From IMG/VR virus record IMGVR_UViG_3300035698_018317, positions 62,001 through 126,000 of that record: a stretch of DNA of 64,000 nucleotides; one strand, written 5' to 3'. The notes under the pieces were generated by a model that saw only the letters and a list, made by a program, of their open reading frames with translations, was not told the origin of the DNA and ran no database searches. This document shows positions 29,206 through 54,700 of the stretch, piece by piece; the first letter of the stretch is position 1; every line of letters starts with the position of its first letter. Position numbers and translations under genes: made by a program.

Positions 29206-29556
29206 TTAATTCCTTTTTTCCCATTTACATCCTAATATAATTCTCATCATCCAACGATGAAAAAAGTTTGGAACTCCTCCCAAACCCGGAGTCAAAGTCA
29301 TACCATTGCTTCCATTAGAACCAAATAAGTGGCAACACCATTCATCTTGTCCTTGGTTTGGAGCTTGGATATTAAATTGTTCTTGGGGGATTACATCAAT
29401 TTCATATTCTGGTTCTTGGTAAGGAACTACATCATCACTTTCCCATGCTTGGGTATTAAATTGTTCTTGGGGGATTACATCAATTTCATATTCTGGTTCT
29501 TGGCAAGGAACTACACCATCACTTTCCCATCCAAGATTGAGTTTTTTCGATTTCAT
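29206..29556 (-). CDS. Hypothetical protein with a 28 aa internal duplication
   Basis: Start placed at ATG 29556, 6 nt after a TATAAT box (ORF track 29206..29610). Confidence 0.55.
   Translation of the reverse strand: MKSKKLNLGWESDGVVPCQEPEYEIDVIPQEQFNTQAWESDDVVPYQEPEYEIDVIPQEQFNIQAPNQGQDEWCCHLFGSNGSNGMTLTPGLGGVPNFFHRWMMRIILGCKWEKRN
29363..29530. repeat. 84 bp tandem duplication (2 copies)
   Basis: Units start at 29363 and 29447 and differ at only a few positions. Confidence 0.95.
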
Positions 29557-29562
29557 AAATTT

Positions 29563-29591
29563 ATTATACATAAAAACAATAAATTTTTCAA
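29563..29591 (-). promoter_or_regulatory. Near-consensus sigma70 promoter
   Basis: TTGAAA-17 nt-TATAAT, then 6 nt, then ATG. Confidence 0.75.
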
Positions 29592-29592
29592 T

Positions 29593-29620
29593 AAAAAAAG
29601 ACCCGCTCAATGGCGGGTCT
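29593..29620 (-). terminator. Rho-independent terminator
   Basis: AGACCCGC/GCGGGTCT stem with a T-run on the minus strand. Confidence 0.8.
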
Positions 29621-31388: not shown

Positions 31389-31741
31389 CTTAACTTTTTA
31401 AAAGTTCTTAGTTTTTCTACGAGAGGATGTATGTGGTCATACAAAACTTTTCTTCTTTCAATGAAATCATCATCATTTGGCCTTCCAGATATTTTGTCTA
31501 ATTCATCTTCTAGACCTTCTACTGTGTGTATTGAACAACAGGGTATAGATATTGGCATTCCATCAGTCACCATTGGCGGGAACTTATTTTCACACACAGG
31601 CTGATAATTTTTTATCAACTCATCCCAAAGCATTGGCTCTCCCGTAGTAGGTATCGCATACATTATATCATTTTGTATGGTAACGTAATGTATATTTAAT
31701 CGTTCACCTTCTGCGTTTTTATATTCGTAGTAATTTGACAT
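31385..31741 (-). CDS. Hypothetical protein
   Basis: 118 aa; SD AAGGAG. Confidence 0.6.
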   Translation of the reverse strand: MSNYYEYKNAEGERLNIHYVTIQNDIMYAIPTTGEPMLWDELIKNYQPVCENKFPPMVTDGMPISIPCCSIHTVEGLEDELDKISGRPNDDDFIERRKVLYDHIHPLVEKLRTFKKLS

Positions 31742-31792
31742 ATTTCTCCTTAAATTGACATATTAATGTAGTGTCTTTTCTATAATAATATC

Positions 31793-32509
31793 ATGAAAGA
31801 CTTAGTGATAGGACTCTGTACCGTAAGTAATAGAAAAACAAGTTATCTTCAGGCAACACTGGATAGTTTGATAAATAATGCCAATAATAAAAACGGCATG
31901 GTAATAAGATTGCATCATTGTGATTTAAAAGGACAAGACGAACTTTGTGTTGGGTCCAATCAAGTTAAAATAGAAGATTTGTATGAAGATGAAATCAATT
32001 CAGGATTTTTGCAAATTATTCGAATAGACAACCACCCTGTGTTTGAAAACCTACCAAATAATTTTGGAGATAATGACACCAGAGTGTCTTGGAGAACAAA
32101 ACAGTGTTATGACTATAGTGAAGCATTTCGATTGAGTCATAATATCGGTAAGCATTACATGCATATTGAAGATGACTTAATTGCTTGCAAGGGTTACGAT
32201 TCGTACATCAGGAGCGAAATAGAAAAAGCAAATAATAATTGGGCGACTATATGGATGGCTCAAGGTGGGTTTATTGGCTGGTTATTCAGAAATAAAGACT
32301 TACCTAAAATGTCTAGCATGTTAAATGTTTTTAAGGAAGAAATGCCGTGTGATTGGATTGCTGAGTATTTTGCTATAATTATGCAGAGAACTGGATTACA
32401 AAATATCCATACAAACTACAGTATTTTTCAACATGTTGGAAGAGACAGAACATTACGAGATGGAAAAGATGATATTCAACCTGTAACTTTCACAAATTTT
32501 GTCGATTAA
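31793..32509 (+). CDS. MGAT4/GT54-like glycosyltransferase
   Basis: RKTSYLQATLDSL, WRTKQCYDY, YMHIEDDL, GFIGWLF...DL, PCDW, SIFQHVG. Confidence 0.75.
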   Translation: MKDLVIGLCTVSNRKTSYLQATLDSLINNANNKNGMVIRLHHCDLKGQDELCVGSNQVKIEDLYEDEINSGFLQIIRIDNHPVFENLPNNFGDNDTRVSWRTKQCYDYSEAFRLSHNIGKHYMHIEDDLIACKGYDSYIRSEIEKANNNWATIWMAQGGFIGWLFRNKDLPKMSSMLNVFKEEMPCDWIAEYFAIIMQRTGLQNIHTNYSIFQHVGRDRTLRDGKDDIQPVTFTNFVD

Positions 32510-32547: not shown

Positions 32548-32829
32548 ATGAGCGTACAAATTTTAAAATTAGTCACAGGTGAAGATGTCATTGCAAGAGT
32601 AGATGTTGCAGAAGATGCATATACAATAACAAAAGGTTTCAGATTGGCAGTTACACAGGAAGGATTAATGATGGCCCCCTTGTGTCCTTTCTCAAAAGAT
32701 GATATACTTACTATCGAGAAAGACAGGATAGTATTTATGACTGACCCGGATTCGGAAATAGAAACTGAGTACATGAATCAAACGAGTAACATTATAACGG
32801 CCTCTGGCCCTACTATTGCAGGAGTTTAA
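32548..32829 (+). CDS. Small Sm/Lsm-like protein of the type common in T4-like phages
   Basis: VQILKLVTGEDVIA...P. Confidence 0.55.
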   Translation: MSVQILKLVTGEDVIARVDVAEDAYTITKGFRLAVTQEGLMMAPLCPFSKDDILTIEKDRIVFMTDPDSEIETEYMNQTSNIITASGPTIAGV

Positions 32830-36278: not shown

Positions 36279-36545
36279 ATGAATTATACATTATTAAGAG
36301 ATGAGTGGATAGGACCGGATGATGAGATTCTCGTCTCTTTCAACGTATATGATGAAGATTATGGGCTATTAGCATGGAGTAGCGATTATGTTGATATGAG
36401 CGAGGCTATTAGCGAATTTGATTTGAATGAAATCAGAAAAGAAATCATAGAACAGTGTAAGACGTTTAAACTTACTGTAGATTTATCCGCAAAGGCACCC
36501 ACAGAGTGGGGCGAAGAATGGGAAGAAGAAAGAGTGTTAACATGA
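36279..36545 (+). CDS. Hypothetical acidic protein
   Basis: 88 aa ORF. Confidence 0.55.
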   Translation: MNYTLLRDEWIGPDDEILVSFNVYDEDYGLLAWSSDYVDMSEAISEFDLNEIRKEIIEQCKTFKLTVDLSAKAPTEWGEEWEEERVLT

Positions 36546-37192: not shown

Positions 37193-37430
37193 CTTGACGT
37201 TCCCGTTCCCTATTTGCCATGTCGTTCATGGTGCCGATGGCGTCTGCTCGTTCTTCAGGACCGTCACCGCCAGCATGATATGATTTGTCATCATTAAGTA
37301 CGCCGTTTTCTATCCATTGAACAATGTATTCATTCCATTCAGTGTCTTTTTTAATTTTGAGTAAAACATCGCCAATAACAATGCCTCCTCCAGCGACTTC
37401 CTCAATAACCCATTCCGAAAAACTTTTCAT
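37179..37430 (-). CDS. Small protein with CTS-like start (MKSFSEWVIEE)
   Basis: 83 aa ORF. Confidence 0.6.
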   Translation of the reverse strand: MKSFSEWVIEEVAGGGIVIGDVLLKIKKDTEWNEYIVQWIENGVLNDDKSYHAGGDGPEERADAIGTMNDMANRERERQANSV

Positions 37431-37432
37431 AT

Positions 37433-38482: not shown

Positions 38483-39564
38483 GAACTTTAGCAATAAAAA
38501 ATTCCAAACAGGGTAATGATTTTAATGTAGTTATATCTGATTCGGCTCTAGCTGAAATGGAAGAATACGTTAAAGTTAACCACCCAAAAACGACTGTCTA
38601 CATCATATATGACCAAATCTTAGGAGATAAGATAGACCTACTTCGGAAAGATACAGTTTTCATTCCTTACCCCAAGACAAGAAGCTACAGAGAATCGGCA
38701 GAAGAAATAAAAAATTGGAAAACAGCAACTCAATTGGTAAAGAATTTGTTTGAATATGGTATGAAAAAAAATGATGTGGTGATTGCTGTTGGTGGTGGGA
38801 CAGTTACCGACATGGCTGGATTTGTCTCTACGCTTGTTTATAGAGGGGTAAGTTGCATCTATTGTCCAACGACTATATCGTGCAGTATTGATGCGTGTAT
38901 CGGGGGAGAAACGGGAGTAAATTACGGCAAGAGAAAAAATGTTATTGGGACATTCCGAAATCCTAATGCTGTGTTCGTTGATTTAAATTTATTACAAAGT
39001 TTGTCCCATGAGGAAGTCCAAAGCGGACTTTGTACAAGCATAAAACATGCATTAATATGTGATGAAGGTTTTTTCCATTTTATACAAGAAAATTCCAATA
39101 ATATATATGAGAAAAACCACGAAACCTTAGAAGAATTGATTTATAAAAATCTGGAAATCAAAAGAACATTTGTCACATCAGATGGATTGTACAATAAAAA
39201 AATTGCTTTGGATTTAGGTCAACCTTTCTTTGATGCTTTGGTTAAACACTTTGAATATAATTATGAAGTCGCTTTAGCTATGGGATTAATAATAGTGTGT
39301 CGTGTTTCTAATAAACTCAATCTTCTTAGTGATGAAGATTTAGTTAAGATTGATGCATTACTATCATCTCATTTCAATCTTAGCATCGCAACTGGTAGAC
39401 CACCGAAAAGAGATGTAGATTACTTGATGAAATCAATACGTCGCCATAAAGAAGTAAATATAGTCCTTCCTGTTGCCATAGGTAACGTAGAGGTACATAC
39501 CGTTCCAATAAAATTATTGAACGAATCTTTAACTAGTGTATTCGTTGATGATGGCCGTTTCTAG
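38479..39564 (+). CDS. 3-dehydroquinate synthase (AroB)-like protein with degenerate active site
   Basis: GGGTVTD, PTT, D..IGG, KNVIGTF..P present; metal ligands are replaced. Confidence 0.85.
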   Translation: MRTLAIKNSKQGNDFNVVISDSALAEMEEYVKVNHPKTTVYIIYDQILGDKIDLLRKDTVFIPYPKTRSYRESAEEIKNWKTATQLVKNLFEYGMKKNDVVIAVGGGTVTDMAGFVSTLVYRGVSCIYCPTTISCSIDACIGGETGVNYGKRKNVIGTFRNPNAVFVDLNLLQSLSHEEVQSGLCTSIKHALICDEGFFHFIQENSNNIYEKNHETLEELIYKNLEIKRTFVTSDGLYNKKIALDLGQPFFDALVKHFEYNYEVALAMGLIIVCRVSNKLNLLSDEDLVKIDALLSSHFNLSIATGRPPKRDVDYLMKSIRRHKEVNIVLPVAIGNVEVHTVPIKLLNESLTSVFVDDGRF

Positions 39565-40485
39565 TAGAATTTTATACCATTGATAAGTAGATTGAAGCCC
39601 TTCTTTAAATGGAATCTTTGCTTTCCAGCCTGCTTCTGTAATTTTTGTTACATCAAGAAGTTTTCTCATAGTCCCATCAGGTTTAGAAGTATCTGTCACA
39701 ATTTCTCCTTTAAAACCTACAACTTCTTTTATTGCTTCGGCAATTTCTAATATGGATAAATCTTCTCCGGTTCCTACATTGATAATATCAGGCGAATCAT
39801 AATTGTTCATCAAAAACAGACAGGCATAAGCCAAATCGTCTACATGAAGCATTTCTCTTCTTGGAGTTCCGGTTCCCCACATCACAACTTGTTTGTCTCC
39901 ATTCATTTTGGCTTCATGAAATTTCCTCATTAAAGCTGGTAGTAGGTGAGATGTTTCTAAGTCAAAATTGTCATTCGGGCCAAACAAGTTGGTTGGCATC
40001 AAGCAAATGCCATTGAACCCATATTGCTTGGCATAAGATTGTATCATTTGGATACCAGCTATTTTAGCAATTGCATACGCATTGTTTGTAGACTCAAGTG
40101 GTCCAGTCAGAAGATAGTCTTCCTTAATGGGTTGTGGGCATTCTTTTGGGTAAATACAAGATGAACCTAAAAACATGAGCTTTTTGACGCCATTACGATA
40201 TGCTGAATCAATAACGTTTGTTTGAATCATTAAATTATCGTATATGAAATCAGCAGGGCATGTAGAATTTGCAACAATTCCCCCTACCGTTGCTGCTGAC
40301 AAGAAAATATATTCCGGCTTACTTTCTTTAAACCATTTATCTACTTCATCACGGTTTCTCAAATCTACTTCTAATCTTGTTTTTACTTCGATGTTCGCAT
40401 ATCCATTCAGATATAGTTTTGTTACTATGGCTGACCCTACCAACCCCTTATGACCTAAAACAATTATTTTACTTTCTTTTTTCAT
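39529..40485 (-). CDS. fcl: GDP-L-fucose synthase
   Basis: GHKGLVGSA, LGSSCIYPK, YAIAK, PTNLFGPNDNF, GTGTPRRE. Confidence 0.95.
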   Translation of the reverse strand: MKKESKIIVLGHKGLVGSAIVTKLYLNGYANIEVKTRLEVDLRNRDEVDKWFKESKPEYIFLSAATVGGIVANSTCPADFIYDNLMIQTNVIDSAYRNGVKKLMFLGSSCIYPKECPQPIKEDYLLTGPLESTNNAYAIAKIAGIQMIQSYAKQYGFNGICLMPTNLFGPNDNFDLETSHLLPALMRKFHEAKMNGDKQVVMWGTGTPRREMLHVDDLAYACLFLMNNYDSPDIINVGTGEDLSILEIAEAIKEVVGFKGEIVTDTSKPDGTMRKLLDVTKITEAGWKAKIPFKEGLQSTYQWYKILLETAIINEYTS

Positions 40486-40486
40486 T

Positions 40487-41557
40487 TTATCTTATCCTAT
40501 AATCTAAGTTTGGCCGACAATCATACTTCATCATATCATCAATAATCATGTCAAAATCAAATTCGGGTTTCCAACCAATTTTTTTTATTTTAGAAGGATT
40601 TCCAAGAAGAACATCTACCTCTGACGGTCGGAAATACTTTTTATCTACTTTTACAACTACATTCCCAGCGTATACGCCTACTTCATCTATACCAGAACCA
40701 CTCCATTCTAAGGGCATTCCCATCCAGTCAAAACATTTTTTTACGAATTCTCTTACAGTATGTGTTTCTCCTGTGGCTACAACATAATCATCTGGTTCAT
40801 CTTGTTGTAAAATAAGCCATTGTGATTTAACATAATCCCTAGCATGTCCCCAATCTCTATAGGCATCCATATTCCCCAGTCTAAGAGGTTCTACAAACTG
40901 AAACTTTCTTTCTTTAAGTAATGATAAATTTTCGCCACACCATCTTGTTATTTTTTTTGTTACAAAAGTTTCTCCTCTGCGAGAGGATTCATGGTTGAAT
41001 AAGATTCCATTGCAAGCAAAAGAACCATAAGCTTCACGATAGTTCTTTGTAATCCAATATGCGTATAACTTAGCAGCCCCATACGGAGAACGAGGATGGA
41101 AATCATTATTTTCATCATATCCATTTTCAGGCATTTCGCTACGCCGTCCCCCAAACATCTCTGATGTAGATGCTTGGTAGAATTTAGAATTAGGGCAATT
41201 CTGGTACATAGCATCTAACAATCTAAGACATCCAATAGCGTCTACATCGGCTGTATATTCTGGAACTTCAAAAGATACCTTTACATGACTTTGAGCGGCC
41301 AGATTATAGATTTCTTTTGGCTTGATTTTAGAAATTAAAGCTGTGAGATTACTAGAATCTGTCATGTCCCCATGATGAATAAATAATTTTTTTCCATATA
41401 TCTTGTCATCTGACATGAGATGTTCTATCCGTTCCGTAGTAAAAACAGAACTTCTACGCATGATTCCATGCACTTCATATCCTTTATCTAACAAGAATTC
41501 TGCTAGATAGCTTCCATCTTGACCTGTAATGCCAGTAATAATAGCTTTCTTATTCAT
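40487..41557 (-). CDS. gmd: GDP-mannose 4,6-dehydratase
   Basis: [45 protein letters not shown]. Confidence 0.97.
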
Positions 41558-44810: not shown

Positions 44811-45053
44811 TTACTATTATATAGACGAAAAGGATTAATTCCAAAAGGAGAAATCTTGATAAATGAAGATTGTTACTGGTTTTTAGATAAAGCTGAAAGC
44901 ATAATGAAGGCACTATGCGTGGAGTGCCAACAAATAGAGAAAACTGGCTGGTTTTGGAAAGGCAGCGAGTTTGGTTATGGTGATTACCACTTAGAATGTT
45001 CTAAGTGTGGAAAGATTCTACATGAAAGTAAAAAAAATGAGACCTCCGTTTAA
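44799..45053 (+). CDS. Small Zn-ribbon protein
   Basis: CVEC and CSKC pairs; start uncertain. Confidence 0.5.
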   Translation: MSNHLLLYRRKGLIPKGEILINEDCYWFLDKAESIMKALCVECQQIEKTGWFWKGSEFGYGDYHLECSKCGKILHESKKNETSV

Positions 45054-45831: not shown

Positions 45832-45850
45832 CCAACAAACTATATATTAT

Positions 45851-46039: not shown

Positions 46040-46370
46040 CGAATACATGGATACCGCAAAAAGTCTTTTCGGGGATAATAAAGACACACAAGCAAAAGCC
46101 GTCATACGTTCAGGTATCAATTTAAGACCTGATTTTTGGGACGATTTTATGAGTATTACAAATGATTCAGAAGGTGTTTCTCAATTATTAGATGTTCCAA
46201 AAGAAAAAGTTTCTAATTGGGCTTCTCTCGTAAAAGATGCATTGGAAGATGTACAAGCAACAGATAATGAAGAAAAAGGTGGACGTTCAGAAATCTTGGG
46301 GACTGGCGAAGATATTGAAGACCCCAAAGGACACCCGGACCACATGGATGATTTGAGACCTACACCTTAA
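46026..46370 (+). CDS. Protein with CTS-like start (MRTFSEYMD)
   Basis: ORF 45999..46370; probable ATG at 46026. Confidence 0.6.
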   Translation: MRTFSEYMDTAKSLFGDNKDTQAKAVIRSGINLRPDFWDDFMSITNDSEGVSQLLDVPKEKVSNWASLVKDALEDVQATDNEEKGGRSEILGTGEDIEDPKGHPDHMDDLRPTP

Positions 46371-47068
46371 TCCCAGCCCAAAATTTTACGTAAAACATCA
46401 TCCGGTTGAAACACGGGATTTTTATACTTTTCAATATATTTCAATTGTGCATCAACATTGTGCCCACTCTTTATTACCTTCTGCTTATACCCTTCTTTAT
46501 TTGTTATTTTAGTTGGCATACTTGGGTGATAACCCTCTCTATAGCCATCCCTGAAGAACGTTATACCTGTAACAAATAGTTCGGTAATCTTAAAAGTCAT
46601 TAAATAATCAATTGCTAACACACCAGTGTTGGCCGTACTACCACCTATGCTGTGTGTTATTTGTTTATGAATGTTTAAAGGAATATAAACTACTTCAAAT
46701 TCAGTATTAATTTCCTCTAGTGCCTTAACACGTTTTTGAACAGCCCCCGTACTTGCGGGATGCCATGTAATCAAATATTTAAGCCCTAATTCCTTAGCTG
46801 GTATCCAAATAGTATCATAAACTTCTTTTAATCTGTCTGTATATCCTTTTTGTTTAGAATGTTTATTTAAATAATCTTCAGCCAACCCTGTTACTAATGC
46901 GTCGGTGTGATGTCCAACATCTTCATAATTATCTTCACTTATTGGCAATGCGCTATTCATACGAATAACTTTATCATAATTATCTATAAGTTGTCCCGAA
47001 CCCTTCAGCGAAGGGGAGGGGCCAACCAACACAACACGTTTATCATATAAATCTTTAACTATACTCAT
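46367..47068 (-). CDS. GT29 (sialyltransferase-like) glycosyltransferase
   Basis: Sialylmotif-L-like VVLVGPSPSLKGSGQLIDNYDKVIRMN; S-like ANTGVLAI; probable start at 47068. Confidence 0.7.
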   Translation of the reverse strand: MSIVKDLYDKRVVLVGPSPSLKGSGQLIDNYDKVIRMNSALPISEDNYEDVGHHTDALVTGLAEDYLNKHSKQKGYTDRLKEVYDTIWIPAKELGLKYLITWHPASTGAVQKRVKALEEINTEFEVVYIPLNIHKQITHSIGGSTANTGVLAIDYLMTFKITELFVTGITFFRDGYREGYHPSMPTKITNKEGYKQKVIKSGHNVDAQLKYIEKYKNPVFQPDDVLRKILGWD

Positions 47069-47598
47069 TTCCAAACCCCAATGTATAAAGCATGGTCTCC
47101 TTGACTTCCTTCTGAATAGATATGGACATCGGTTAATTCTGCGTATTCTTCCAGCTTTTTTTTCCACCATGGTTGATTATGTGCTGAAGGATGTAATGTC
47201 TCATCATCAACTCTATAACAAGTCTCCTTTTTGAAACAAACTGTAACAAAAAGCCTACAACTTACACGTTTCATTTCTATTAGAGATGCATCAACTAAAT
47301 GTGCATCTAAGTGTTCTAAACAATCAAAAGAAGTTAATACGTCAAACTCTTTCTCATCAAATGGTAAATTATCAGCGGAAGCTTTAACATCAGCCGATGG
47401 ACATGCTATATCAACACCTATTCTTTTTGAAACGTCTAAACCTTTAATAAATTCGTTATGGCCACATCCAATGTCAACTACAGATGAAGCATCTAACTCT
47501 TTGAATAAACACATATGGTCTCGGCTATGATTGTCATGCCCATACTGTCCATACTTGTTTTGATTATTGTAAATGTATTCGTAATGTTCTTTGGTCAT
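47065..47598 (-). CDS. Class I SAM-dependent methyltransferase
   Basis: VVDIGCG, FDCLEHL. Confidence 0.85.
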   Translation of the reverse strand: MTKEHYEYIYNNQNKYGQYGHDNHSRDHMCLFKELDASSVVDIGCGHNEFIKGLDVSKRIGVDIACPSADVKASADNLPFDEKEFDVLTSFDCLEHLDAHLVDASLIEMKRVSCRLFVTVCFKKETCYRVDDETLHPSAHNQPWWKKKLEEYAELTDVHIYSEGSQGDHALYIGVWK

Positions 47599-47601
47599 TT
47601 T

Positions 47602-48284
47602 TTAAACTCCTGTAGCAATAATTACATATCCTTCTTTATCGTCTTTTCCATATGATAAAAGACCTTTTCCAACCGAATCTGTAAAGTTAAGGCCCATTTG
47701 AGCTGCTAATATACCTATTACTGATTGGTCATGACGGTGCCCAAGTACTCTTGAATCCTTACTGCACGAGCCTTTATCATTCTTCCAAGGGCCACTAAAA
47801 ACTTCTTTGTTTTTACTATAATCTAACCATTTATCAAAACATTCGGTGCAAATAGGATTAGTAAAATCAAAGCCCATTACATTAGCCATGGCATGAGGCA
47901 TTTTAAATGCCTCTTCTCTACTTACTCCCATGATTTCTAAACATCTATCAGTAGTCCAATCACCACTTGTCCATCCATTCAATTGTATATAATATCCCTG
48001 TTTTTCTATTATATCCCAATGTGCGTCTAAACTCTTCTTGACATAACATCCGGCATCAATCCACAACACTTGGTCATAACCCTGCTTACGGGCTAAATCA
48101 ATGACATATGGTTTAAATGCATAATTTATTTCTTGGTGTGTTGGACATCCATCTGGGTATTTAGTATAAAATTTAACATCACCATTGTAATGGTCTAATA
48201 CACTCTTTTTTAATTTTTTTGAAGCATTTAGATATCTTTTGCTATTAGAATTATTATCAAACTAACTACTATTCTTTTTTTCAT
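47602..48284 (-). CDS. GT-A-like glycosyltransferase with an apparent -1 frameshift near 48260
   Basis: ATG at 48284 reads MKKRIVVS and then stops; the alternative frame is open from about 48259 through PTHQEINYAFKPY..LWIDAG..RHDQS; paralogue of 48294..49037. Confidence 0.7.
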
Positions 48285-48293
48285 AGTTCTCTC

Positions 48294-49037
48294 CTAACCG
48301 CCATTAGCTAAAAATATAATATCTTTGTATTCTGTGTCCATGCCGGGACGCCAATACAAAACATCACATATCTCGTTTTCTTTTCTTTTCCCTTTTAATC
48401 CTGTATTGACATGTCTCCAATTGGTTGCTCCTAATTGATGAGCAATTAAAGATACAGGTGCTTGCTGTCTATGCCCCAGTACTCTCTTGTCGCTACTTGC
48501 CTCACAGTTATTATTATGTCTTATTCTGTTATCTCCATCTCCTGATGCTTCTGGGCACTGCCATGTGTACCTCCAATCCCAAATTCTATCAAATAAATCA
48601 ATACCAATTTGAGAAGTTAAATCTAAACCAAAGCATCCGCCTGAAATACTGGGTATATCGAACAAAGAGTTACGGTCCTCTATACCCATTATTTCTAAAG
48701 CCTTATCCGATGTCCATTGACCCACATTCCAATCGTCATTATCTATAAAATAATATCCTTGTTTGTCTATAATATCAAATATAGGTCGGACATTGTTTAT
48801 GGCCCATAGAGACGAGTCGATATACAATAATTTCTCATATCCTTTGTCTAATAATTCTTTGAAAATATATATCTTAAAACCTAAGTGAAGTTCGTTATGT
48901 GTTGGGCCACCATAAGTCTCAGGAGTTACTGGCTGATAATCACCGTCCCAATACTTTTTGATGCTTTCTTTTTGTCGTTCTAAACATCTGTAATATCTTG
49001 GACTATCTGCATAACTAAATATTATTTCTTTACTCAT
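48294..49037 (-). CDS. GT-A-like glycosyltransferase
   Basis: PTH...GFK.Y, LYIDSS, GQWTSD, DKRVLGHR. Confidence 0.7.
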   Translation of the reverse strand: MSKEIIFSYADSPRYYRCLERQKESIKKYWDGDYQPVTPETYGGPTHNELHLGFKIYIFKELLDKGYEKLLYIDSSLWAINNVRPIFDIIDKQGYYFIDNDDWNVGQWTSDKALEIMGIEDRNSLFDIPSISGGCFGLDLTSQIGIDLFDRIWDWRYTWQCPEASGDGDNRIRHNNNCEASSDKRVLGHRQQAPVSLIAHQLGATNWRHVNTGLKGKRKENEICDVLYWRPGMDTEYKDIIFLANGG

Positions 49038-49624
49038 CGTGTTAATATAATATTTTCAGCACTTTGATATACATTCTTATATCCAAGAGGTTCTAGCCTC
49101 TTCTCTATATCTTTAGCTCTATTATCATGTTCTACAATTATTAGAGAACACTTATCCAACTTATCCCAAGGGAACATACAAAACAATTCGTAGCTATACC
49201 CCTCTACATCAACATCAATGAAATCAAAATCATTCCCATATGTTTCTAATAATTGATTTACTGTTATTGAAGGAATGGAAATTTTTTGCCAATCGACACC
49301 ACCTGCCATCGTAGACCATTTATCTCGATGTGCCGTATCACTAGTTGAGATGGCATCTCCCTGTGAATCATAAAAATCAAGAATACCGCCTTCAGGTGTT
49401 ATGGCTGCACATAATAAATCAACATTAGGCTTCCTAACATTTTTCATCAAATTAACAAAGTTAATAGGACTGGCTTCTATTTCTAACCCAGACCATCCTA
49501 GCTCAACTAATGCAAAAGTATTTGAGAAGGTCTTTCCATCATAGGCACCTATGTCTAAAAACTTCCCTTTACGATTTTTAAAATGTTCTAATATAAATTT
49601 TTCTTCATTGTTTTGCGAATACAT
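49034..49624 (-). CDS. FkbM-family methyltransferase
   Basis: YSQNNEE, FLDIGAYDG..SNT, DVDVEG. Confidence 0.85.
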   Translation of the reverse strand: MYSQNNEEKFILEHFKNRKGKFLDIGAYDGKTFSNTFALVELGWSGLEIEASPINFVNLMKNVRKPNVDLLCAAITPEGGILDFYDSQGDAISTSDTAHRDKWSTMAGGVDWQKISIPSITVNQLLETYGNDFDFIDVDVEGYSYELFCMFPWDKLDKCSLIIVEHDNRAKDIEKRLEPLGYKNVYQSAENIILTR

Positions 49625-49674
49625 TTAACGCCTTTCTATATGGTTTTCCAATTATTCATTGGGGGTATTTTTTA

Positions 49675-50871
49675 TTATTTTAAAACTTCCGAAAATATTA
49701 TTGCTATTCCTTTTTCTTCCAAATCTTTTGCTAGTTCAAATGTCCACTGTGTGTTACAAACCGATTTGTACACTAAGGGGCATAATTCCTTGGAAAATAA
49801 AACATTTTTGTAACTTAAAGTATTTTTTACTTCATAGGAGGAAAATACTTCAAAAGAAGATTGTCCATCATCTGCACCTGTTACTACCGATGTTGGGAAC
49901 AGTTTATGCAAATCTAATAAAATTTGAAACCAATTTTCTTTACTTTCTTGCACATCTTGCAACCACACGATTAAATCGCAACTTTCTGAAAGTAAATCAA
50001 TGGCTTTTTTAAATATTATATTTGGATTTTCTTCTTGTATTATATGAGTTTCTATTTCGGAAAATTGATGTGCATATTTTTCTGTCGTTACCACAACATC
50101 TACTGGCGGTGGGGAGACTACTTTAGACATACAAATTAACCCTATTTTATCAATATTTTTTTTGACTTTATCGGTCGAATAATAATTTTTTAGTTTAGGG
50201 TTAATTCGGGGGAATCCCTGTTTCCTTCTTGCGTTGTAATTTATGTTATCCTGATTAAAAAATGTATCATTTCTTTTAAGTAGTTTATCAGCACCCCCTA
50301 TGACATCAATCCATTTATGGACAATTATGATTTCATCAATATATTTAACAGTTCCCATTATCCTTGTGATATCTGTATATTCGTTATCACACCATAACGA
50401 AATATAAGAAGGGTGATAAATATATCCGAAATAATCATACATTTTTTTGTTCATTATTGACAACGTATTTAACGCATTGCCCACCCGCCCATCATTATAA
50501 TGTAATGCCCCAAATTGGTCATATCCAAAATGTTTTTCCATATCTCTTATTACAATTTTGTCATAATCTCGTTTTGCCGGAATCATATCATCAGATATTA
50601 GGAATAAAATTTTGAATTCTTGGCCGGACAAATTAGAATTAACAGCAGATATTTTAGTTTGAATTGGGGGGTTAAAGTGCAACTCGGTATTTGGGATATC
50701 TTTTATTTTTTTTATCATAGCCGGATTATTCATGGACTCATCATCAGCGTCGCAAGAAATTAAGAATTTATAACTATAATCTCCCGATAAAAAATCACAA
50801 TAAATCCCCAGTGTTTTTAAGAACAGTTCGGGTCTCGACCTTGTTGGATATTTAAAAAGTATATCAACCAT
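49675..50871 (-). CDS. GT2-like glycosyltransferase fused to a degenerate second GT-A domain
   Basis: PTRSRP, ISDDM, WCDNE; C-terminal half resembles 52378..53016. Confidence 0.7.
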   Translation of the reverse strand: MVDILFKYPTRSRPELFLKTLGIYCDFLSGDYSYKFLISCDADDESMNNPAMIKKIKDIPNTELHFNPPIQTKISAVNSNLSGQEFKILFLISDDMIPAKRDYDKIVIRDMEKHFGYDQFGALHYNDGRVGNALNTLSIMNKKMYDYFGYIYHPSYISLWCDNEYTDITRIMGTVKYIDEIIIVHKWIDVIGGADKLLKRNDTFFNQDNINYNARRKQGFPRINPKLKNYYSTDKVKKNIDKIGLICMSKVVSPPPVDVVVTTEKYAHQFSEIETHIIQEENPNIIFKKAIDLLSESCDLIVWLQDVQESKENWFQILLDLHKLFPTSVVTGADDGQSSFEVFSSYEVKNTLSYKNVLFSKELCPLVYKSVCNTQWTFELAKDLEEKGIAIIFSEVLK

Positions 50872-50877
50872 AGTAAC

Positions 50878-51411
50878 CTATTTTCTATATATATAGTAGT
50901 AAATAGGCTCTGTTATAAATTCTTCTTTTTTCAACAAAGGATAAACGCCATCAGAAAAATCACGGTCTTCGCCATGATTTTTCTTCGGAAAGCCAACTTT
51001 TAACGCCAATTCTCTTTTAATCGGGTTTAAGTGATTGGGGCTTCTATAAAAGATTCCATTCTTTTCAAACCAGCCTTTATATTCAATAGAGTGTATGAAA
51101 GTTCGAGGGGATTCTCCATTGGTGGTCATGACTCCATTTATACCCACGCAATCTGGCCCAGATTTTATAGCATTTAATATGTTCGATATATAATTTGGTG
51201 ATACCAAATCATCATCATCTACAAAAGAAACATAATCACCAATAGCTTGTCTAAGAAGTTCGTTTCTTTTTGTGCCTATATCTTTTTCCCCATTATCTAT
51301 ATTGAACAATATTTCTATATCGGGCTGTCTTTGTTGTTCCAGAACGTCTAAAAGTCTATCGGCTACCTGCCACCTATTCTCCAAAGACACAATTAAAATT
51401 GATAATTTCAA
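50878..51411 (-). CDS. GT2 glycosyltransferase
   Basis: IGTKRN, FVDDDD, HGED. Confidence 0.85.
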   Translation of the reverse strand: MKLSILIVSLENRWQVADRLLDVLEQQRQPDIEILFNIDNGEKDIGTKRNELLRQAIGDYVSFVDDDDLVSPNYISNILNAIKSGPDCVGINGVMTTNGESPRTFIHSIEYKGWFEKNGIFYRSPNHLNPIKRELALKVGFPKKNHGEDRDFSDGVYPLLKKEEFITEPIYYYIYRK

Positions 51412-51420
51412 GGATAACTC

Positions 51421-52347
51421 CTATTCGGCCCAATCATCTCTGACTTTAGTAATATGTTTTTTTCCACTAAGAGTAAGGAATTGCAGCCATGTGGAAAACG
51501 AATTATTCACGGTGTATATATTTTGTGCTTTTTCAGCGACTTTACTCCAATCAAGAATGGTAAAATTAGAAATTTTTTCCATATAAATAGTTTTAATATT
51601 CTTTTCAAACTCTAGAGCGGTCTTGTCAAAACCATAATGGTAATACTCATTCACTAGATTAAATTTTTCATCTTCTTCTAAGCCAAGGATATTAGTAAAC
51701 AATTTGGATTCAGATTCTTTATCTCTTATCCAAGTAGAATTTTTATAAGTGGATGGAGGCATATTCCACAACTTATAAATGCTTTCTAGATAATCTAATT
51801 CTCCTTCAATGATGGAGGGTGCGTGTTGAATTGGAATTTCTAGTATGCCTTTTTTATTAACAAAGTTTTTACTGTCATCAGTTTTCAAATAATCAGTATT
51901 GATAAAAGTAATATAATCGGAGTGCTTATTTAAATCTGTTAAGTTATATGAAACTGGCCATATAATCTTATAACCAAGTTCTTTATAATATCTGGCTATT
52001 GGTTCTGAGAACAATATAGTTCTTAAACTTTTTGTGCAATTAAAAATGCATAGTCTGCCGGTGTTTAATTTCTCTACGTCCATTCTTGCAACTACATCTG
52101 TCTCAGAGTAAATGTTATGAATTTCTTTTAGGATTACGACTGGCGTTGGGGGAGTTGCCTGATTTCTTTTTTTTACTTTTGCTTTTGCCGTTCTTACCAT
52201 GGGTTCTCTAACCTTAACCTTCCTGTTATTTTGCTTTTTGCCAAATATCTTTTTTAGCTTGTCCGATGATATCCCTCTTTGTCCAGCGAAGACATTTCGA
52301 TTGGCGTTTATTCTTGTTGCTTTTTGATTTCTCGTATTTCTTGCCAT
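51421..52347 (-). CDS. Putative glycosyltransferase-like protein with basic MARNTRNQKATR leader
   Basis: ILFSEPIARYY..GYKIIWP; paralogue of 53675..54700. Confidence 0.55.
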   Translation of the reverse strand: MARNTRNQKATRINANRNVFAGQRGISSDKLKKIFGKKQNNRKVKVREPMVRTAKAKVKKRNQATPPTPVVILKEIHNIYSETDVVARMDVEKLNTGRLCIFNCTKSLRTILFSEPIARYYKELGYKIIWPVSYNLTDLNKHSDYITFINTDYLKTDDSKNFVNKKGILEIPIQHAPSIIEGELDYLESIYKLWNMPPSTYKNSTWIRDKESESKLFTNILGLEEDEKFNLVNEYYHYGFDKTALEFEKNIKTIYMEKISNFTILDWSKVAEKAQNIYTVNNSFSTWLQFLTLSGKKHITKVRDDWAE

Positions 52348-52377
52348 AATATAATTCTATTCACTAATTTATCTAGT

Positions 52378-53016
52378 TTAAACATTAACCCACATGTCGC
52401 TTGTGTCAACATTGTTATGGCCCATAGAACTATCTTCTCCTATATGGGCAATCACGGATGGGGAAGAAGCAATCATCAATATTTTATCATTTGCTAACTT
52501 TTTAGAAACATCCCAATCCCATTGGCTATTATTTACTTGGGGTCGTAATTTAGGCCAAAGGTCTTTGTTAAACATTAAGTTGATTCCACCAATACTTCTT
52601 TTGGTATAATATGTTTCAAAGATTCCAGTGAATCTATGAGCAGCAGTGTTAAACCCAGTAACAACAGACCGAGGGAAGCAAGAATGTAGCTCAAACAATA
52701 TAGTAAGCCAATAAGGTTTCACTAAGGCATCCGGGTCTAGATTAATAAGAATATCAAAATCGTTTTCATAAAGATAATCAAACCCCTTCTTTATATTATA
52801 AGCTATTCCTCTATTTTTTTCATTTTCCAGCCTTACAATTGGAACATTCTCTATTTCGAAACTGTTGAATATGTTTAGAGTATCCTTATTTGTGCTGCAA
52901 TCATCCAAAAGAACAATGGTTAAATCATCTGGCAAGTAGCTATTTTTGATGCTATCAAGCGTCTTTTGAAGATACTCTGGTCTGTCAAATAAAGTTATTA
53001 ATAATCCTGTTTTCAT
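52378..53016 (-). CDS. GT2 glycosyltransferase
   Basis: FDRPEYL, LLDDCST, NRGIA, LDPDA. Confidence 0.82.
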   Translation of the reverse strand: MKTGLLITLFDRPEYLQKTLDSIKNSYLPDDLTIVLLDDCSTNKDTLNIFNSFEIENVPIVRLENEKNRGIAYNIKKGFDYLYENDFDILINLDPDALVKPYWLTILFELHSCFPRSVVTGFNTAAHRFTGIFETYYTKRSIGGINLMFNKDLWPKLRPQVNNSQWDWDVSKKLANDKILMIASSPSVIAHIGEDSSMGHNNVDTSDMWVNV

Positions 53017-53675
53017 TTTATCCTACTTTTATACAAAGAGAAATCCATTTGTCCGAATGTGGCTTCTAAACTAATGTCTCTCATTGCAATTCTTTTTCCA
53101 GTTAAATACATATCATTTAAATAATCAGTCCCAAGCCCTTCTTCATCAAGTATAGGTATGATTTTAGGGGTTTCTGAACAAACAATTTCACAATCAGGCA
53201 TATCGTTTTTCACACAATCTTCTAATTCTTCAAAAGAGGAAAAATCAGATAGAAGAATAGTTCTTCCTATTTCTTTTGTCTTAAATACTTGGCCATTTAA
53301 TTCTATAGGGTATCGCCAATTTCCTTTTTGTTTTTTTATTCTTATCGAAAGATAAGTATTATCTTCCAAGTCTTCTAAGCTAAAAGAGCTTCTAAACAGA
53401 TAAATATCGTGTAAAAAAATGGAGTAAGCAGAAGATGGGTTAATTACATCAAGAAGCTGTTCTTTTAAATTAGCTTTTCTTTTTTGTATTAAAATATTTG
53501 GATATAGGGACGATAAGATTTTAAACGAGTTATCAAATCTATTATTTGTCGCCTCATACAGAACAGTTATGGAATGAGATTTGTAATTGTAAAAATATTT
53601 TTCAATGCTCCTGAGAAGCAAATCAACTTGGCACGCCCTGTCTTTGGAAAGTATGATTAAGTTGAATTTTTTCAT
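53013..53675 (-). CDS. GT-A-like protein, degenerate
   Basis: IILSKDRACQVDLLLRSI; the DxD position appears as LHD. Confidence 0.5.
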   Translation of the reverse strand: MKKFNLIILSKDRACQVDLLLRSIEKYFYNYKSHSITVLYEATNNRFDNSFKILSSLYPNILIQKRKANLKEQLLDVINPSSAYSIFLHDIYLFRSSFSLEDLEDNTYLSIRIKKQKGNWRYPIELNGQVFKTKEIGRTILLSDFSSFEELEDCVKNDMPDCEIVCSETPKIIPILDEEGLGTDYLNDMYLTGKRIAMRDISLEATFGQMDFSLYKSRIK

Positions 53676-54700
53676 TATACATTATGGATTTTATATTTGC
53701 TTTTAAAAGGAACTTCTCCAAATGCATCTTCATTAGATTTAAGATGTAAATGAAGCTCCTTGTTCTTTAGGTTCAAGAGTTCAATCCAATACATAATAGC
53801 ACTAGGTGCTACATGTATTGTTGTGGCATTTTCTATTACTTTGCTCCAATCTAAAAGCGTAAAATTTGATATTTTTTCTACGTATACGTTTTTGAGGTCA
53901 TTGCCTGTTTCTATATCAATTCGCTTACTGAAATCTCTATTTAAAAACTCACTAACCAAATTGTATTTATCTCCGTCTTTAAGTCTAAGGATGCTAGAGA
54001 AAAGCTTGTCTTCTGCCTTTTCATCTCTTTTCCAACTGGATTCTTGCCATTTATTTATAGACATATTCCACAAATCATATTTACTTTTCATCTTGTGGTC
54101 TTCTGAAACCGCCTTTAGCTCATTAGAATATATTAAAGGAACAATTAGGGCATCTTGTATATTGAAAAAATCTTTATGCCCATAATTAAATTTCATAAGT
54201 TTTTTATCTATAAACGTAATATAATCAGAGTGTTTGTTCATTCCAGAATATACAGAATCTAATGGCCATATTACTTTATAACCAAGTTCGTGATAATATC
54301 GAGCTATTGGTTCTGAAAAAAGTATTTCCTTAATAGAAACTGGTTGATTAATATAGCAGATTCTATTGTGGTTTAAAGCTTCAATTCTCATTCGTTCTTC
54401 GACATCTGCCTTATCGTACACATGTAAAGGCTGAGCGGTTTCAAGTGCTTTGATTGTAGGTGTTGGTGTTTTTCTTTTTCTTGTATGACGAACCATTTCT
54501 TTATTCACTCCCTTTTTCAGGTGCTTTTTTTGTATTCTTTCCATCCTGTCAGCAGTGGATGTGGATGGGGTTCGGGCAGCATTTGGTTTAGAACCAAATA
54601 TCTTTCTTAATTTGTCCGATGATATTCCTTTTTGGCCTACGAAGACTTTTCTGTTGACATGTGCTCTGGTTGCTTTTTGATTTCTTGTATTTCTTGCCAT
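53675..54700 (-). CDS. Putative glycosyltransferase-like protein with basic MARNTRNQKATR leader
   Basis: Paralogue of 51421..52347. Confidence 0.55.
   Translation of the reverse strand: MARNTRNQKATRAHVNRKVFVGQKGISSDKLRKIFGSKPNAARTPSTSTADRMERIQKKHLKKGVNKEMVRHTRKRKTPTPTIKALETAQPLHVYDKADVEERMRIEALNHNRICYINQPVSIKEILFSEPIARYYHELGYKVIWPLDSVYSGMNKHSDYITFIDKKLMKFNYGHKDFFNIQDALIVPLIYSNELKAVSEDHKMKSKYDLWNMSINKWQESSWKRDEKAEDKLFSSILRLKDGDKYNLVSEFLNRDFSKRIDIETGNDLKNVYVEKISNFTLLDWSKVIENATTIHVAPSAIMYWIELLNLKNKELHLHLKSNEDAFGEVPFKSKYKIHNV

What the first reader, a model, noticed from the sequence alone, without database searches (positions are those of the whole stretch)
31793..32509. Phage-encoded MGAT4 (GT54)-like GlcNAc transferase
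Seen: motifs in the order typical of MGAT4 (SYL..TL.SL, WR.KQ..DY, EDD, GFIG.LF, P.DW, S.FQH.G). Known: GT54 enzymes are chiefly eukaryotic N-glycan branching enzymes. Inference: the phage builds branched glycans on virion proteins or remodels host glycans.
Basis: partly seen in the sequence, partly recalled or inferred. Interest (0 to 1): 0.65.

Follow-up and report, generated by a model that had tools for sequence, protein, structure and literature searches.

The report
Animal-type sugar transferase in a phage
A very large bacteriophage from a salt lake carries an intact, conserved gene for the catalytic core of GnT-IV/MGAT4, an enzyme family that a 2025 study described as restricted to animals, and its nearest relatives are a small, undescribed group of bacterial and viral enzymes rather than animal ones.

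Summary
Its only Pfam hit is PF04666 MGAT4_cons (E 1e-39, 136.6 bits, cut-off 51.5). The AlphaFold model (pLDDT 94.7) superposes on chordate MGAT4 models (TM 0.90, rmsd 1.8 A).

The genome is a T4-like huge phage: a 225-kb fragment, estimated 44% complete. Orthologues in sister phages show dN/dS of about 0.07.

It is not a recent capture from a eukaryote. It belongs to a well-supported "mini-GT54" clade of stand-alone catalytic domains with no membrane anchor, stem or lectin domain. This clade occurs sporadically in bacteria, in at least three phage lineages and in a giant-virus-like contig.

Relatives sit in glycan gene clusters beside mannosyltransferase-type genes. They are repeatedly next to, or fused with, a GT2 that this phage also encodes. 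The phage also carries GDP-fucose synthesis genes, several more glycosyltransferases and methyltransferases.

Best reading: a soluble, DxD/metal-dependent, inverting GlcNAc transferase that adds a branch to a phage-directed glycan in the host cytoplasm. Donor, acceptor and final target (virion protein or host envelope) are inferred, not shown.

It is a new variant of a known family and bears on the unresolved origin of GT54.

The parts
31793..32509 (+). Mini-GT54 gene: 238-aa stand-alone MGAT4-type catalytic domain
   Evidence: ORF. PF04666 at E 1e-39. AF2 pLDDT 94.7. TM 0.90 to chordate MGAT4 models. dN/dS 0.07.
31811..31870 (+). GT54 motif 1 region (G7-L-C-T-V-S-N-R-K...S-Y-L-Q-A-T-L-D-S-L); first beta strand and helix of the nucleotide-binding fold
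   Evidence: Sequence. G7, Y18 and L19 are invariant in the mini clade. Corresponds to GxPxxKR / G(L/I)xVKR of PMC12616123.
32063..32116 (+). GT54 motif 2: F-G-D-x6-W-R-T-K-Q-C-Y-D-Y (ABD-type FGDx6WR)
   Evidence: Sequence. R101 and K103 are invariant and W100 and Q104 nearly invariant over 119 sequences. Motif definition.
32168..32176 (+). DxD metal/nucleotide-sugar motif (E126-D127-D128)
   Evidence: D127 and D128 are invariant and E126 is at least 90% conserved over 119 sequences. EDD is the GT54 DxD.
32267..32287 (+). GT54 motif 4: G-F-I-G-W-L-F (GFIGKLF type)
   Evidence: G159, I161 and G162 nearly invariant.
32345..32356 (+). P-C-D-W; D187 is the candidate catalytic base
   Evidence: P185 and D187 are invariant over 119 sequences. 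The role as base is an inference.
32420..32440 (+). GT54 motif 5: S-I-F-Q-H-V-G (HVGxH type; the last H is replaced by D)
   Evidence: H214 and G216 are invariant in the mini clade. Motif definition.
32548..32829 (+). Co-directional 93-aa downstream gene (phrog_527, function unknown); kept next to the GT54 gene in sister phages
   Evidence: A homologue is present in the 595-kb relative LR756511.1, which lacks the GT54 gene.
52378..53016 (-). GT2 glycosyltransferase (212 aa); proposed working partner of the GT54 enzyme
   Evidence: PF00535 at 56 bits. Homologues lie 0.3-2 kb from the GT54 gene in L015/L016, L031, L033, L034 and L066, and 8 kb away in L017. A GT2 domain is fused to GT54 in L053 and L066.
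46367..54700 (-). Glycan gene cluster: GT29-like (46367-47170), methyltransferase (47065-47598), FkbM methyltransferase (49034-49624), GT-A protein (49675-50871), GT2 (50878-51411), GT2 (52378-53016), and the paralogous unknowns 51421-52347 and 53675-54700
   Evidence: Collinear with the glycan cluster of the relative L015, where the GT54 gene lies inside the cluster.
40487..41557 (-). GDP-mannose 4,6-dehydratase (Gmd)
   Evidence: TIGR01472 at 495 bits against a cut-off of 415. PF16363 at 431 bits.
39529..40485 (-). GDP-L-fucose synthase-like epimerase/reductase
   Evidence: NF047922 at 469 bits, just under the cut-off of 500. PF01370.

Best explanation
The gene encodes a soluble, cytoplasmic, minimal member of glycosyltransferase family GT54. 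It is the GT-A catalytic core of GnT-IV/MGAT4 without the Golgi anchor, stem or lectin domain. It is carried as an accessory gene by a T4-like huge phage.

Proposed mechanism (inferred):
- The EDD motif binds a divalent metal and the diphosphate of a UDP-HexNAc, most likely UDP-GlcNAc taken from the host pool.
- An invariant carboxylate (D187) deprotonates a hydroxyl of a sugar acceptor, probably a mannose-type residue.
- GlcNAc is transferred with inversion, giving a beta-linked branch.

The enzyme works within a phage-directed glycan pathway together with a specific GT2, further GTs, methyltransferases and phage-made GDP-fucose.

The finished glycan most likely decorates a phage structural protein (my estimate about 40%) or is placed on the host envelope (about 30%).

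The gene belongs to an undescribed prokaryote/virus 'mini-GT54' clade. It is not a recent capture from an animal.
For: Shown:
- Family: PF04666 is the sole Pfam hit, at 136.6 bits against a cut-off of 51.5.
- Motifs: all five published GT54 catalytic motifs are present, in the ABD form. R101, K103, D127, D128, P185 and D187 are invariant across 119 family members.
- Fold: AF2 model pLDDT 94.7, pTM 0.92. It matches a chordate MGAT4 model cluster at TM 0.90, rmsd 1.8 A, over 229 aa. The best solved folds are the inverting GT-A enzymes GnT-I, TarP and SpsA.
- Localisation: no hydrophobic segment, pI 5.6.
- Phage origin: Gp23, Gp20, TerL and prohead protease are present, in an IMG/VR record of 225 kb.
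- Functional gene: orthologues at 86-90% identity keep the synteny, and dN/dS is 0.06-0.07.
- Phylogeny: the split between mini and eukaryote-type clades has 100/98 support. The window trio lies inside a 16-row clade (100/100) and is sister to a bacterial group (94/89).

Context of relatives:
- Inside a glycan cluster (DegT, GT15, GT2, hexapeptide transferase, two epimerases) in the related phage L015.
- In a bacterial polysaccharide cluster with a Wzt ABC transporter, a GT32-GT2-GT62 protein and two GT2 genes.
- In a GT54-GT2 operon.
- As GT2-GT54 fusion proteins.
- The window-type GT2 lies within 0.3-2 kb of the GT54 gene in six loci (L015, L016, L031, L033, L034 and L066) and 8 kb away in L017.

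The phage's own toolkit: Gmd, an Fcl-like enzyme, GT2 genes, a GT-A protein, FkbM and other methyltransferases, a GT29-like gene and a GT32-sulfotransferase.
Against: - No biochemical data exist for any member of the mini clade. Donor, linkage and acceptor are extrapolated from animal enzymes that are only 30-38% identical.
- In this phage the gene is 14-20 kb away from the glycan cluster. It lies in a variable island downstream of the capsid gene, among ORFs of unknown function, so its link to the cluster rests on relatives.
- The held 225 kb shows no initiating phosphoglycosyltransferase, ABC transporter or GT41, so the route to any target is open. The fragment is about 44% of the genome.
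- Other contexts point to no single role: TPR/GT41/FKBP islands, a position between RecO and KsgA, and a position next to a SemiSWEET-like gene and radical-SAM genes in other phages.
- Motif 5 lacks its final His.
- The mannose-acceptor idea rests only on co-occurring GT15, GT32 and GT62 families and on family precedent.
Confidence: 0.7

Rival explanations
1. Host-envelope remodelling. The enzyme and the phage GT set modify an undecaprenyl-linked surface polysaccharide (O-antigen, capsule or teichoic-acid-like) of the infected cell, for example to block superinfection or adsorption of progeny to lysing cells, rather than decorating virions.
For: The best-annotated bacterial relative sits in an ABC-transporter-dependent polysaccharide cluster with Wzt, LicD and a cytidylyltransferase. 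Serotype conversion by phage GTs is established (cited in PMC12619734). TarP, a prophage GlcNAc transferase of wall teichoic acid, is among the top structural neighbours.
Against: No initiating transferase, flippase or ABC transporter was found in the held 225 kb. The phage is T4-like, with no lysogeny genes noticed in the window. The fragment is only about 44% of the genome, so this absence is weak evidence.
Confidence: 0.3
2. DNA hypermodification. The enzyme glycosylates a hydroxymethylated base in phage DNA, as do the T4 glucosyltransferases and the JGT-like GT-A enzymes of metaviromes.
For: Phage GT-A enzymes do glycosylate 5hmC, including with HexNAc (bioRxiv 10.1101/2023.12.21.572611). 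The genome encodes a divergent thymidylate-synthase-like protein. In two other phage lineages the mini-GT54 gene lies near DNA-replication genes and 7-deazaguanine-type genes.
Against: Known DNA GT-As are JGT-like, carry R...DDD...EDY/F motifs and sit next to C5-MT/5mYOX/ThyS genes. This protein instead has the GT54 motif set. It is acidic (pI 5.6, net charge -7) and lies about 128 kb from the TS-like gene. Bacterial relatives lie in polysaccharide clusters.
Confidence: 0.07
3. Recent capture of an animal or protist MGAT4 gene, retaining N-glycan branching specificity.
For: The motifs are of the animal ABD type. The best named sequence hits are sea-urchin MGAT4C-like proteins at 38% identity.
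Against: The gene is separated from all eukaryote-type rows by a 100/98 branch. Its nearest kin, at 45-57% identity, are short proteins on bacterial and phage contigs. It has no stem, TM or lectin domain. A caudovirus infects prokaryotes, which lack the GlcNAc-beta-1,2-Man N-glycan acceptor (established knowledge).
Confidence: 0.03
4. Modification of a host or phage cytoplasmic protein or small molecule, for example extension of protein-linked sugars laid down by TPR-GT41 enzymes, or inactivation of a host factor, unconnected with the phage glycan cluster.
For: The closest bacterial homologues, at 50-57% identity, are embedded in arrays of TPR/GT41-domain proteins and FKBP isomerases in at least four contigs. 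In the window the gene is not inside the glycan cluster.
Against: No GT41 was found in the held phage genome. The recurrent GT2 neighbourhood and fusion, and the cluster position in the related phage L015, point to oligosaccharide assembly.
Confidence: 0.12

Closest known systems
MGAT4A/MGAT4B (GnT-IVa/b), GT54 subgroup ABD
   Same: Same Pfam family (PF04666). The same five catalytic motifs are present in the ABD spelling: FGDx6WR, EDD, GFIGxLF, HVG. The predicted GT-A core is superposable at TM 0.90.
   Different: Only 30-38% identical. Lacks the type II membrane anchor, stem, linker and C-terminal GlcNAc-binding lectin domain (CBM94). It is cytoplasmic in a bacterium, not in the Golgi lumen. 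The canonical acceptor (GlcNAc-beta-1,2-Man-alpha-1,3 arm of N-glycans) does not exist in its setting. It lies outside the eukaryote-type clade.
MGAT4C / GnT-VI-type enzymes, GT54 subgroup CEFG
   Same: Same family. The best named sequence hits are sea-urchin, amphioxus and mollusc 'MGAT4C-like' proteins.
   Different: Its motifs follow the ABD form, not the CEFG form (FNDPx5FR, GYIGKLY). The domain losses are the same as listed for MGAT4A/B.
MGAT4D (GnT1IP)
   Same: A GT54 member that also lacks the lectin domain (PMC12616123).
   Different: MGAT4D is a membrane-anchored vertebrate protein without GnT-IV activity. The phage protein is soluble and keeps every catalytic motif under purifying selection.
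GnT-I (GT13; PDB 1FOA) and other inverting GT-A enzymes (TarP, SpsA)
   Same: They are the best solved structural neighbours, sharing the GT-A fold with a DxD motif.
   Different: TM is only 0.5-0.58 and identity 7-15%. They belong to different CAZy families.
Autonomous glycosylation systems of giant viruses (chlorovirus and mimivirus type)
   Same: The virus carries its own nucleotide-sugar synthesis (Gmd plus GDP-fucose synthase), several GTs and sugar methyltransferases. That these systems decorate capsid proteins or fibrils is from my own knowledge.
   Different: This virus is a tailed phage of a prokaryote. No GT54 was found in BFVD viral models or in INPHARED phage genomes.

Membership tests
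GT54 (MGAT4 / GnT-IV family) | Significant match to the family profile (PF04666 MGAT4_cons) above the curated threshold | tested here: met
   E 1e-39, 136.6 bits against 51.5, profile positions 35-272 of 280, and the sole Pfam hit. Confirmed on the genome with 136.4 bits.
GT54 (MGAT4 / GnT-IV family) | Five conserved catalytic-domain motifs (GxPxxKR-type, FGDx6WR, DxD=EDD, GFIGKLF, HVGxH) as defined in PMC12616123 | tested here: met
   All five are present. The core residues R101, K103, D127, D128, P185 and D187 are invariant over 119 sequences. Deviations: motif 1 reads GLCTVSNRK, motif 4 has W for K, and motif 5 ends in D instead of H.
GT54 (MGAT4 / GnT-IV family) | GT-A fold superposable on MGAT4 catalytic domains | tested here: met
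   AF2 pLDDT 94.7. TM 0.90 and rmsd 1.8 A over 229 aa to a chordate MGAT4 model cluster. Both sides are predicted models, and no GT54 catalytic domain is solved.
GT54 (MGAT4 / GnT-IV family) | Type II Golgi topology (N-terminal transmembrane anchor plus stem) | tested here: not met
   The domain starts at residue 1-2. The highest 19-residue hydropathy is 0.6.
GT54 (MGAT4 / GnT-IV family) | C-terminal lectin domain (CBM94 / MGAT4A_C) of the active animal enzymes | tested here: not met
   The protein ends 10-13 residues after motif 5. Eukaryote-type rows carry about 150 further residues.
GT54 (MGAT4 / GnT-IV family) | UDP-GlcNAc donor and beta-1,4 transfer to an alpha-mannose of N-glycans | not testable with these tools
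   Needs an enzyme assay. Only residue conservation and neighbouring mannosyltransferase-type genes speak to it.
Metazoan MGAT4 subfamilies ABD or CEFG | Phylogenetic placement inside the eukaryote-type clade | tested here: not met
   The gene falls in a separate clade of stand-alone domains. The split has SH-aLRT 99 (quick tree of 151 rows) and 100/98 (careful tree of 47 rows).
JGT-like DNA glycosyltransferases (GT-A) of phages | R...DDD...EDY/F motifs and a neighbourhood with C5-MT/5mYOX or ThyS genes | tested here: not met
   The motif set is GT54-type. The neighbours are small ORFs of unknown function, and the TS-like gene is about 128 kb away.

The most novel reading that the evidence does not exclude
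GT54 is not an animal invention. On this reading the stand-alone 'mini-GT54' of bacteria, huge phages and giant-virus-like elements represents the ancestral form, or the vehicle, from which the holozoan Golgi enzyme GnT-IV arose by horizontal transfer followed by addition of an anchor and a lectin domain.

This huge phage would also run a Golgi-like glycosylation line of its own in a bacterial cytoplasm, decorating its virion. The components seen are GT54, a GT29-like sialyltransferase-family protein, a GT32-sulfotransferase fusion, GDP-fucose synthesis and sugar methyltransferases.
Probability: 0.2. Interest if true: 0.85.

Novelty: new variant of a known kind. Interest (0 to 1): 0.62.

Why it matters

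This work finds an intact, selected GT54 catalytic core in a phage. It belongs to a coherent clade that also includes bacterial and giant-virus-like members. That clade supplies a concrete outgroup and a candidate source, so the origin question can be tested with rooted phylogeny and biochemistry.

There are practical points too:
- A 27.7-kDa soluble enzyme without an anchor should be much easier to express and crystallise than the Golgi enzymes. No GT54 catalytic domain turned up in a sequence search of solved structures.
- It could serve as a GlcNAc-branching tool for glycoengineering.

For phage biology, it adds to the evidence that huge phages carry elaborate glycan-building systems of the kind known from giant viruses.

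Tried and rejected
- PDB sequence search: no hit at E<=1.
- PHROGs: only a 0.17 E-value noise hit. NCBIfam: no model matches.
- tblastn against 50,697 INPHARED phage records: no match.
- BFVD fold search: only generic GT-A folds, at most 17% identity.
- Two IMG/VR pattern scans: one further contig, of the same lineage.
- GTDB genome scan: one genome out of 185,579 species, a Thermodesulfovibrionales MAG whose copy is frameshifted.
- 401 genomes of that MAG's phylum (Nitrospirota): only that MAG is above the cut-off.
- A promoter idea from the duplicated AATTGACATATT upstream of the gene: the motif occurs nowhere else in the window and is no more frequent than chance.
- Pfam and PHROGs on the ten nearest ORFs: nothing informative except phrog_527 for the downstream gene.
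- Searches of the held genome for GT41, Bac_transf, ABC_tran, GT1/4, GT15, Anp1, CMP-sugar synthetase and NeuB: all negative. This is uninformative given 44% completeness.
- GC content gives no direction of transfer. The gene is 2-4 points below its flanks in phage and bacterial loci alike.
- AU test: a single clade of the window trio with the L015-type phage copy is not rejected (p 0.118). One acquisition versus two in this phage lineage therefore stays open.
- Complex prediction (GT54 with the GT2 at 52378-53016) was requested six times and the machine was unreachable each time. There is no result, and no binding claim is made.
Full report
**Observation**

Window 31793-32509 (+) is an ATG-to-stop ORF of 238 aa. 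The match covers profile positions 35-272 of 280.

**The genome is a huge tailed phage**

The window encodes several T4-type head and packaging proteins:
- a T4-type major capsid protein (27183-28622; PF07068, E 4e-86);
- a Gp20 portal carrying an intein (19805-22306);
- a large terminase (16596-18461);
- a prohead protease.

The window is bases 62001-126000 of a 225,284-bp IMG/VR virus record that CheckV rates 44% complete. That implies a genome of roughly half a megabase.

The closest capsid protein in INPHARED (78% identity) belongs to a 595-kb uncultured phage, LR756511.1. Its head module is syntenic with the window, but it has no GT54 gene. The stretch between the capsid gene and a conserved 93-aa gene (phrog_527) differs between the two phages, so the GT54 gene lies in a variable island.

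Near-identical DNA was found only in runs labelled salt lake metagenome.

**The gene is real and maintained**

- Proteins 86-90% identical occur on related phage contigs in the same gene order: capsid module, small ORFs, GT54, 93-aa gene.
- Nei-Gojobori dN/dS between the window gene and four such orthologues is 0.06-0.07, at dS about 0.75.
- Gene GC (33.6%) is close to that of the genome (36.8%).

**Fold and catalytic residues**

- An AlphaFold2 model built on a 119-sequence alignment has mean pLDDT 94.7 and pTM 0.92.
- In the ESM Atlas it matches a chordate MGAT4 cluster (PF04666 in 99% of members) at TM 0.90 and rmsd 1.8 A over 229 residues.
- Among solved structures the best matches are GnT-I (1FOA, E 3e-8, TM 0.58), then TarP, SpsA and other inverting GT-A enzymes.
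- No GT54 catalytic domain was found by sequence in the PDB.

Morigo et al. 2025 (PMC12616123) define five GT54 catalytic motifs. All are present here, and in the spelling of the ABD subgroup: FGDx6WR, EDD, GFIGxLF, HVG. Across 119 family members R101, K103, D127, D128, P185 and D187 are invariant.

The protein has no hydrophobic segment and is acidic, with pI 5.6. It begins directly with the first beta strand of the domain and ends about a dozen residues after the last motif. It therefore has none of the anchor, stem, linker or lectin domain of the Golgi enzymes.

**Relatives and phylogeny**

An exhaustive HMMER scan of 1.84 billion cluster representatives found 739 relatives at E<=1e-3, but only 8 at E<=1e-30.

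Trees of the catalytic domain split cleanly in two. I built a quick IQ-TREE on 151 rows and a careful LG+C20 PMSF tree on 47 rows. The split has SH-aLRT 99 in the first and 100/98 in the second.
- One side holds proteins with an N-terminal extension of about 100 aa and a C-terminal extension of about 150 aa. Every named member is eukaryotic: Capsaspora, Corallochytrium, a sponge, amphioxus, molluscs, an annelid and sea urchins.
- The other side holds stand-alone domains of about 230-290 aa, which I call mini-GT54.

The window protein and its two orthologue clusters (100/100) lie inside a 16-row subclade (100/100). They are sister (94/89) to a group of 229-aa proteins. The three members of that group that I checked lie on bacterial contigs.

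With loci from a metagenome scan added, the mini clade grows to 38 rows at SH-aLRT 99. The root is unknown, so the direction of transfer between domains of life is not established.

**Where mini-GT54 genes sit**

1. Bacterial TPR islands. The genes lie between arrays of TPR/GT41-domain proteins and FKBP isomerases, including the 3.58-Mb chromosome of a Thermodesulfovibrionales MAG. In that MAG the gene is frameshifted.
2. L015, a contig of a relative of the window phage. It is collinear with window 45007-64000 (S8 peptidase 61%, COOH-NH2 ligase 56% identical). There the GT54 gene lies inside the glycan cluster (DegT aminotransferase, GT15, GT2, hexapeptide transferase, two epimerases, GT2), just before the S8 peptidase.
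3. Two other phage lineages, with PolA-UDG, an RNR intein, radical-SAM genes and 7-deazaguanine-type genes. There it lies beside a PQ-loop/SemiSWEET-like gene.
4. A bacterial ABC-transporter-type polysaccharide cluster next to MutL. It contains Wzt, a cytidylyltransferase, LicD, a trimodular GT32-GT2-GT62 protein, GT54 and two GT2 genes.
5. A GT54-GT2 operon on a contig of 57% GC.
6. A position between RecO and KsgA on a contig of 59% GC.
7. GT2-GT54 fusion proteins of at least 740 aa on low-GC contigs. One of these also encodes a poxvirus VP39-like domain, which suggests a giant virus, though on thin evidence.

A homologue of the window's GT2 (52378-53016) lies 0.3-2 kb from the GT54 gene in L015/L016, L031, L033, L034 and L066, and 8 kb away in L017. 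This recurrent neighbourhood, plus the fusions, is the strongest functional link found.

**Rarity**

- The close subfamily was found in 1 of 185,579 species genomes.
- In the phylum of that genome, 1 of 401 genomes passed the Pfam cut-off.
- It was found in no INPHARED phage and in no BFVD viral model.
- In IMG/VR it was found only in the window's own lineage.
- Neither PHROGs nor NCBIfam has a model that recognises it.

**The phage's glycan toolkit**

| Location | Gene or domain |
|---|---|
| 40487-41557 | GDP-mannose 4,6-dehydratase (TIGR01472, above cut-off) |
| 39529-40485 | GDP-fucose-synthase-like enzyme |
| 46367-47170 | GT29-like protein (modest, 32 bits against 23) |
| 47065-47598 | methyltransferase |
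| 49034-49624 | FkbM methyltransferase |
| 49675-50871 | phage-type GT-A protein |
| 50878-51411 and 52378-53016 | two GT2 genes |
| 51421-52347 and 53675-54700 | paralogous unknowns |
| elsewhere in the 225-kb record | a further GT2; a GT32-like domain fused to a carbohydrate-sulfotransferase domain |

The rows from 46367 to 54700 form a minus-strand cluster. No initiating phosphoglycosyltransferase, ABC transporter, GT41, GT1/4, NeuB or CMP-sugar synthetase was found in the held fragment.

**Most likely mechanism**

Shown:
- GT54 membership;
- an intact DxD and the other invariant residues;
- a soluble architecture;
- phage carriage under purifying selection;
- association of relatives with glycan clusters and with a specific GT2.

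Inferred:
- The enzyme binds metal and UDP-GlcNAc through E126-D127-D128. All characterised GT54 enzymes use this donor, and it is abundant in bacteria as a wall precursor (established knowledge).
- It uses D187 as the base.
- It adds a beta-GlcNAc branch to a growing glycan in the host cytoplasm.
- A mannose-type acceptor is suggested by two things. The family's canonical acceptor is an alpha-mannoside. Relatives are also flanked by mannosyltransferase-type families (GT15 in L015; GT32 and GT62 in the bacterial cluster), and the phage itself consumes GDP-mannose.

I put the family and general biochemical reading at about 0.7. For the final target my estimates are about 40% virion protein, 30% host envelope polysaccharide, 12% another protein or small molecule, and 7% DNA.

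**Rivals**

- DNA glycosylation is disfavoured. Known phage DNA GT-A enzymes are JGT-like, have other motifs, and sit next to C5-MT/5mYOX/ThyS genes. This protein is acidic and lies about 128 kb from the genome's only thymidylate-synthase-like gene.
- Recent capture from an animal is disfavoured by the tree and by the architecture.
- The TPR/GT41 context of the nearest bacterial homologues keeps a protein-glycosylation role open.

**Comparison with the known, and novelty**

The protein works like GnT-IV in its catalytic core and belongs to GT54 by profile, motifs and fold. It fails three features of the described animal enzymes: the membrane anchor, the lectin domain, and placement within the ABD or CEFG subfamilies. 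I therefore file it as a new variant of a known family.

The literature I could search contains no report of a viral GT54 and none that I found of a bacterial one. The 2025 family study states that GT54 is restricted to Metazoa and that its origin is an enigma. The public data searched here already contradict the restriction, with Capsaspora, Corallochytrium, bacteria and phages.

**Caveats**

- Only the best 150 of 739 representatives could be read.
- Most contexts are metagenomic.
- The tree is unrooted.
- The 'giant-virus-like' label rests on one domain.
- An AU test does not reject a single origin of the two phage copies in this lineage (p 0.118).
- The complex prediction for GT54 with the GT2 could not be run (see Tried and rejected).

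Noticed in passing
window 46367-47170 (-): A 267-aa ORF at the end of the glycan cluster matches PF00777 Glyco_transf_29, the eukaryote-type sialyltransferase family, at 32.1 bits against a cut-off of 23. This is a second 'Golgi-type' GT family in the same phage. No NeuB or CMP-sugar synthetase was found in the held 225 kb.
   Followed up: partly
G000:C1:183937-185325 (L106:937-2325), outside the window: A 462-aa protein combines a GT32-like DXD sugar-binding region with a C-terminal Sulfotransfer_2 domain, the carbohydrate sulfotransferase type.
   Followed up: partly
L053:3-2225 and L066:2530-4845: These are GT2-GT54 fusion proteins of at least 740 aa on low-GC contigs. L053 also encodes a poxvirus VP39-like (PARP_regulatory) protein, which hints at a giant virus.
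   Followed up: partly
L018:4450-5516, L019:171-1237 and L017:8565-10738: In two other phage lineages the mini-GT54 gene follows a PQ-loop/SemiSWEET-like gene. In L018 and L019 that gene lies 57 bp upstream; in L017 it lies about 1.2 kb upstream. The region also holds radical-SAM, B12-binding and transketolase-like genes.
   Followed up: no
L010:8001-8680 (Thermodesulfovibrionales MAG OY970295.1): The only GTDB species genome with the close subfamily has the gene split by a frameshift after ...DILIRI. This is either a pseudogene or a long-read homopolymer error.
   Followed up: partly
window 19805-22306 (+): The T4-type portal gene carries an intein (PF14890 at residues 154-332).
   Followed up: no
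window 41550-42200 (-): A LAGLIDADG homing endonuclease gene directly abuts the GDP-mannose dehydratase gene.
   Followed up: no
window 29206-29610 (-): A 134-aa ORF contains two tandem copies of a 27-aa unit, WESD.VVP.QEPEYEIDVIPQEQFN. It has no family match.
   Followed up: no
window 8866-13165 (-): Two adjacent large proteins carry concanavalin-A-like (Laminin_G_3) domains. One is fused to a purple-acid-phosphatase/metallophosphoesterase module. They may be carbohydrate-binding virion proteins or effector proteins.
   Followed up: no
window 36506-39564 (+): A glutamine amidotransferase, a 349-aa unknown and a 3-dehydroquinate-synthase-like sugar-phosphate cyclase (below the AroB cut-off) lie just upstream of the fucose genes.
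   Followed up: no
window 55323-56267 (+) and 60053-61006 (+): A subtilase (S8) and a phiEco32-type COOH-NH2 ligase are conserved at 56-61% identity in the related contig L015. There the S8 gene immediately follows the GT54 gene.
   Followed up: partly
G000:C1:222485-223429 (L107:186-1130), outside the window: A divergent thymidylate-synthase-family protein (58 bits) is encoded here. Whether it is a thymidylate synthase or a hydroxymethylase was not resolved.
   Followed up: partly
window 31733-31764 (+): The 12-mer AATTGACATATT is duplicated 20 bp apart just upstream of the GT54 start codon. It is not repeated elsewhere in the window and is not above chance.
   Followed up: yes
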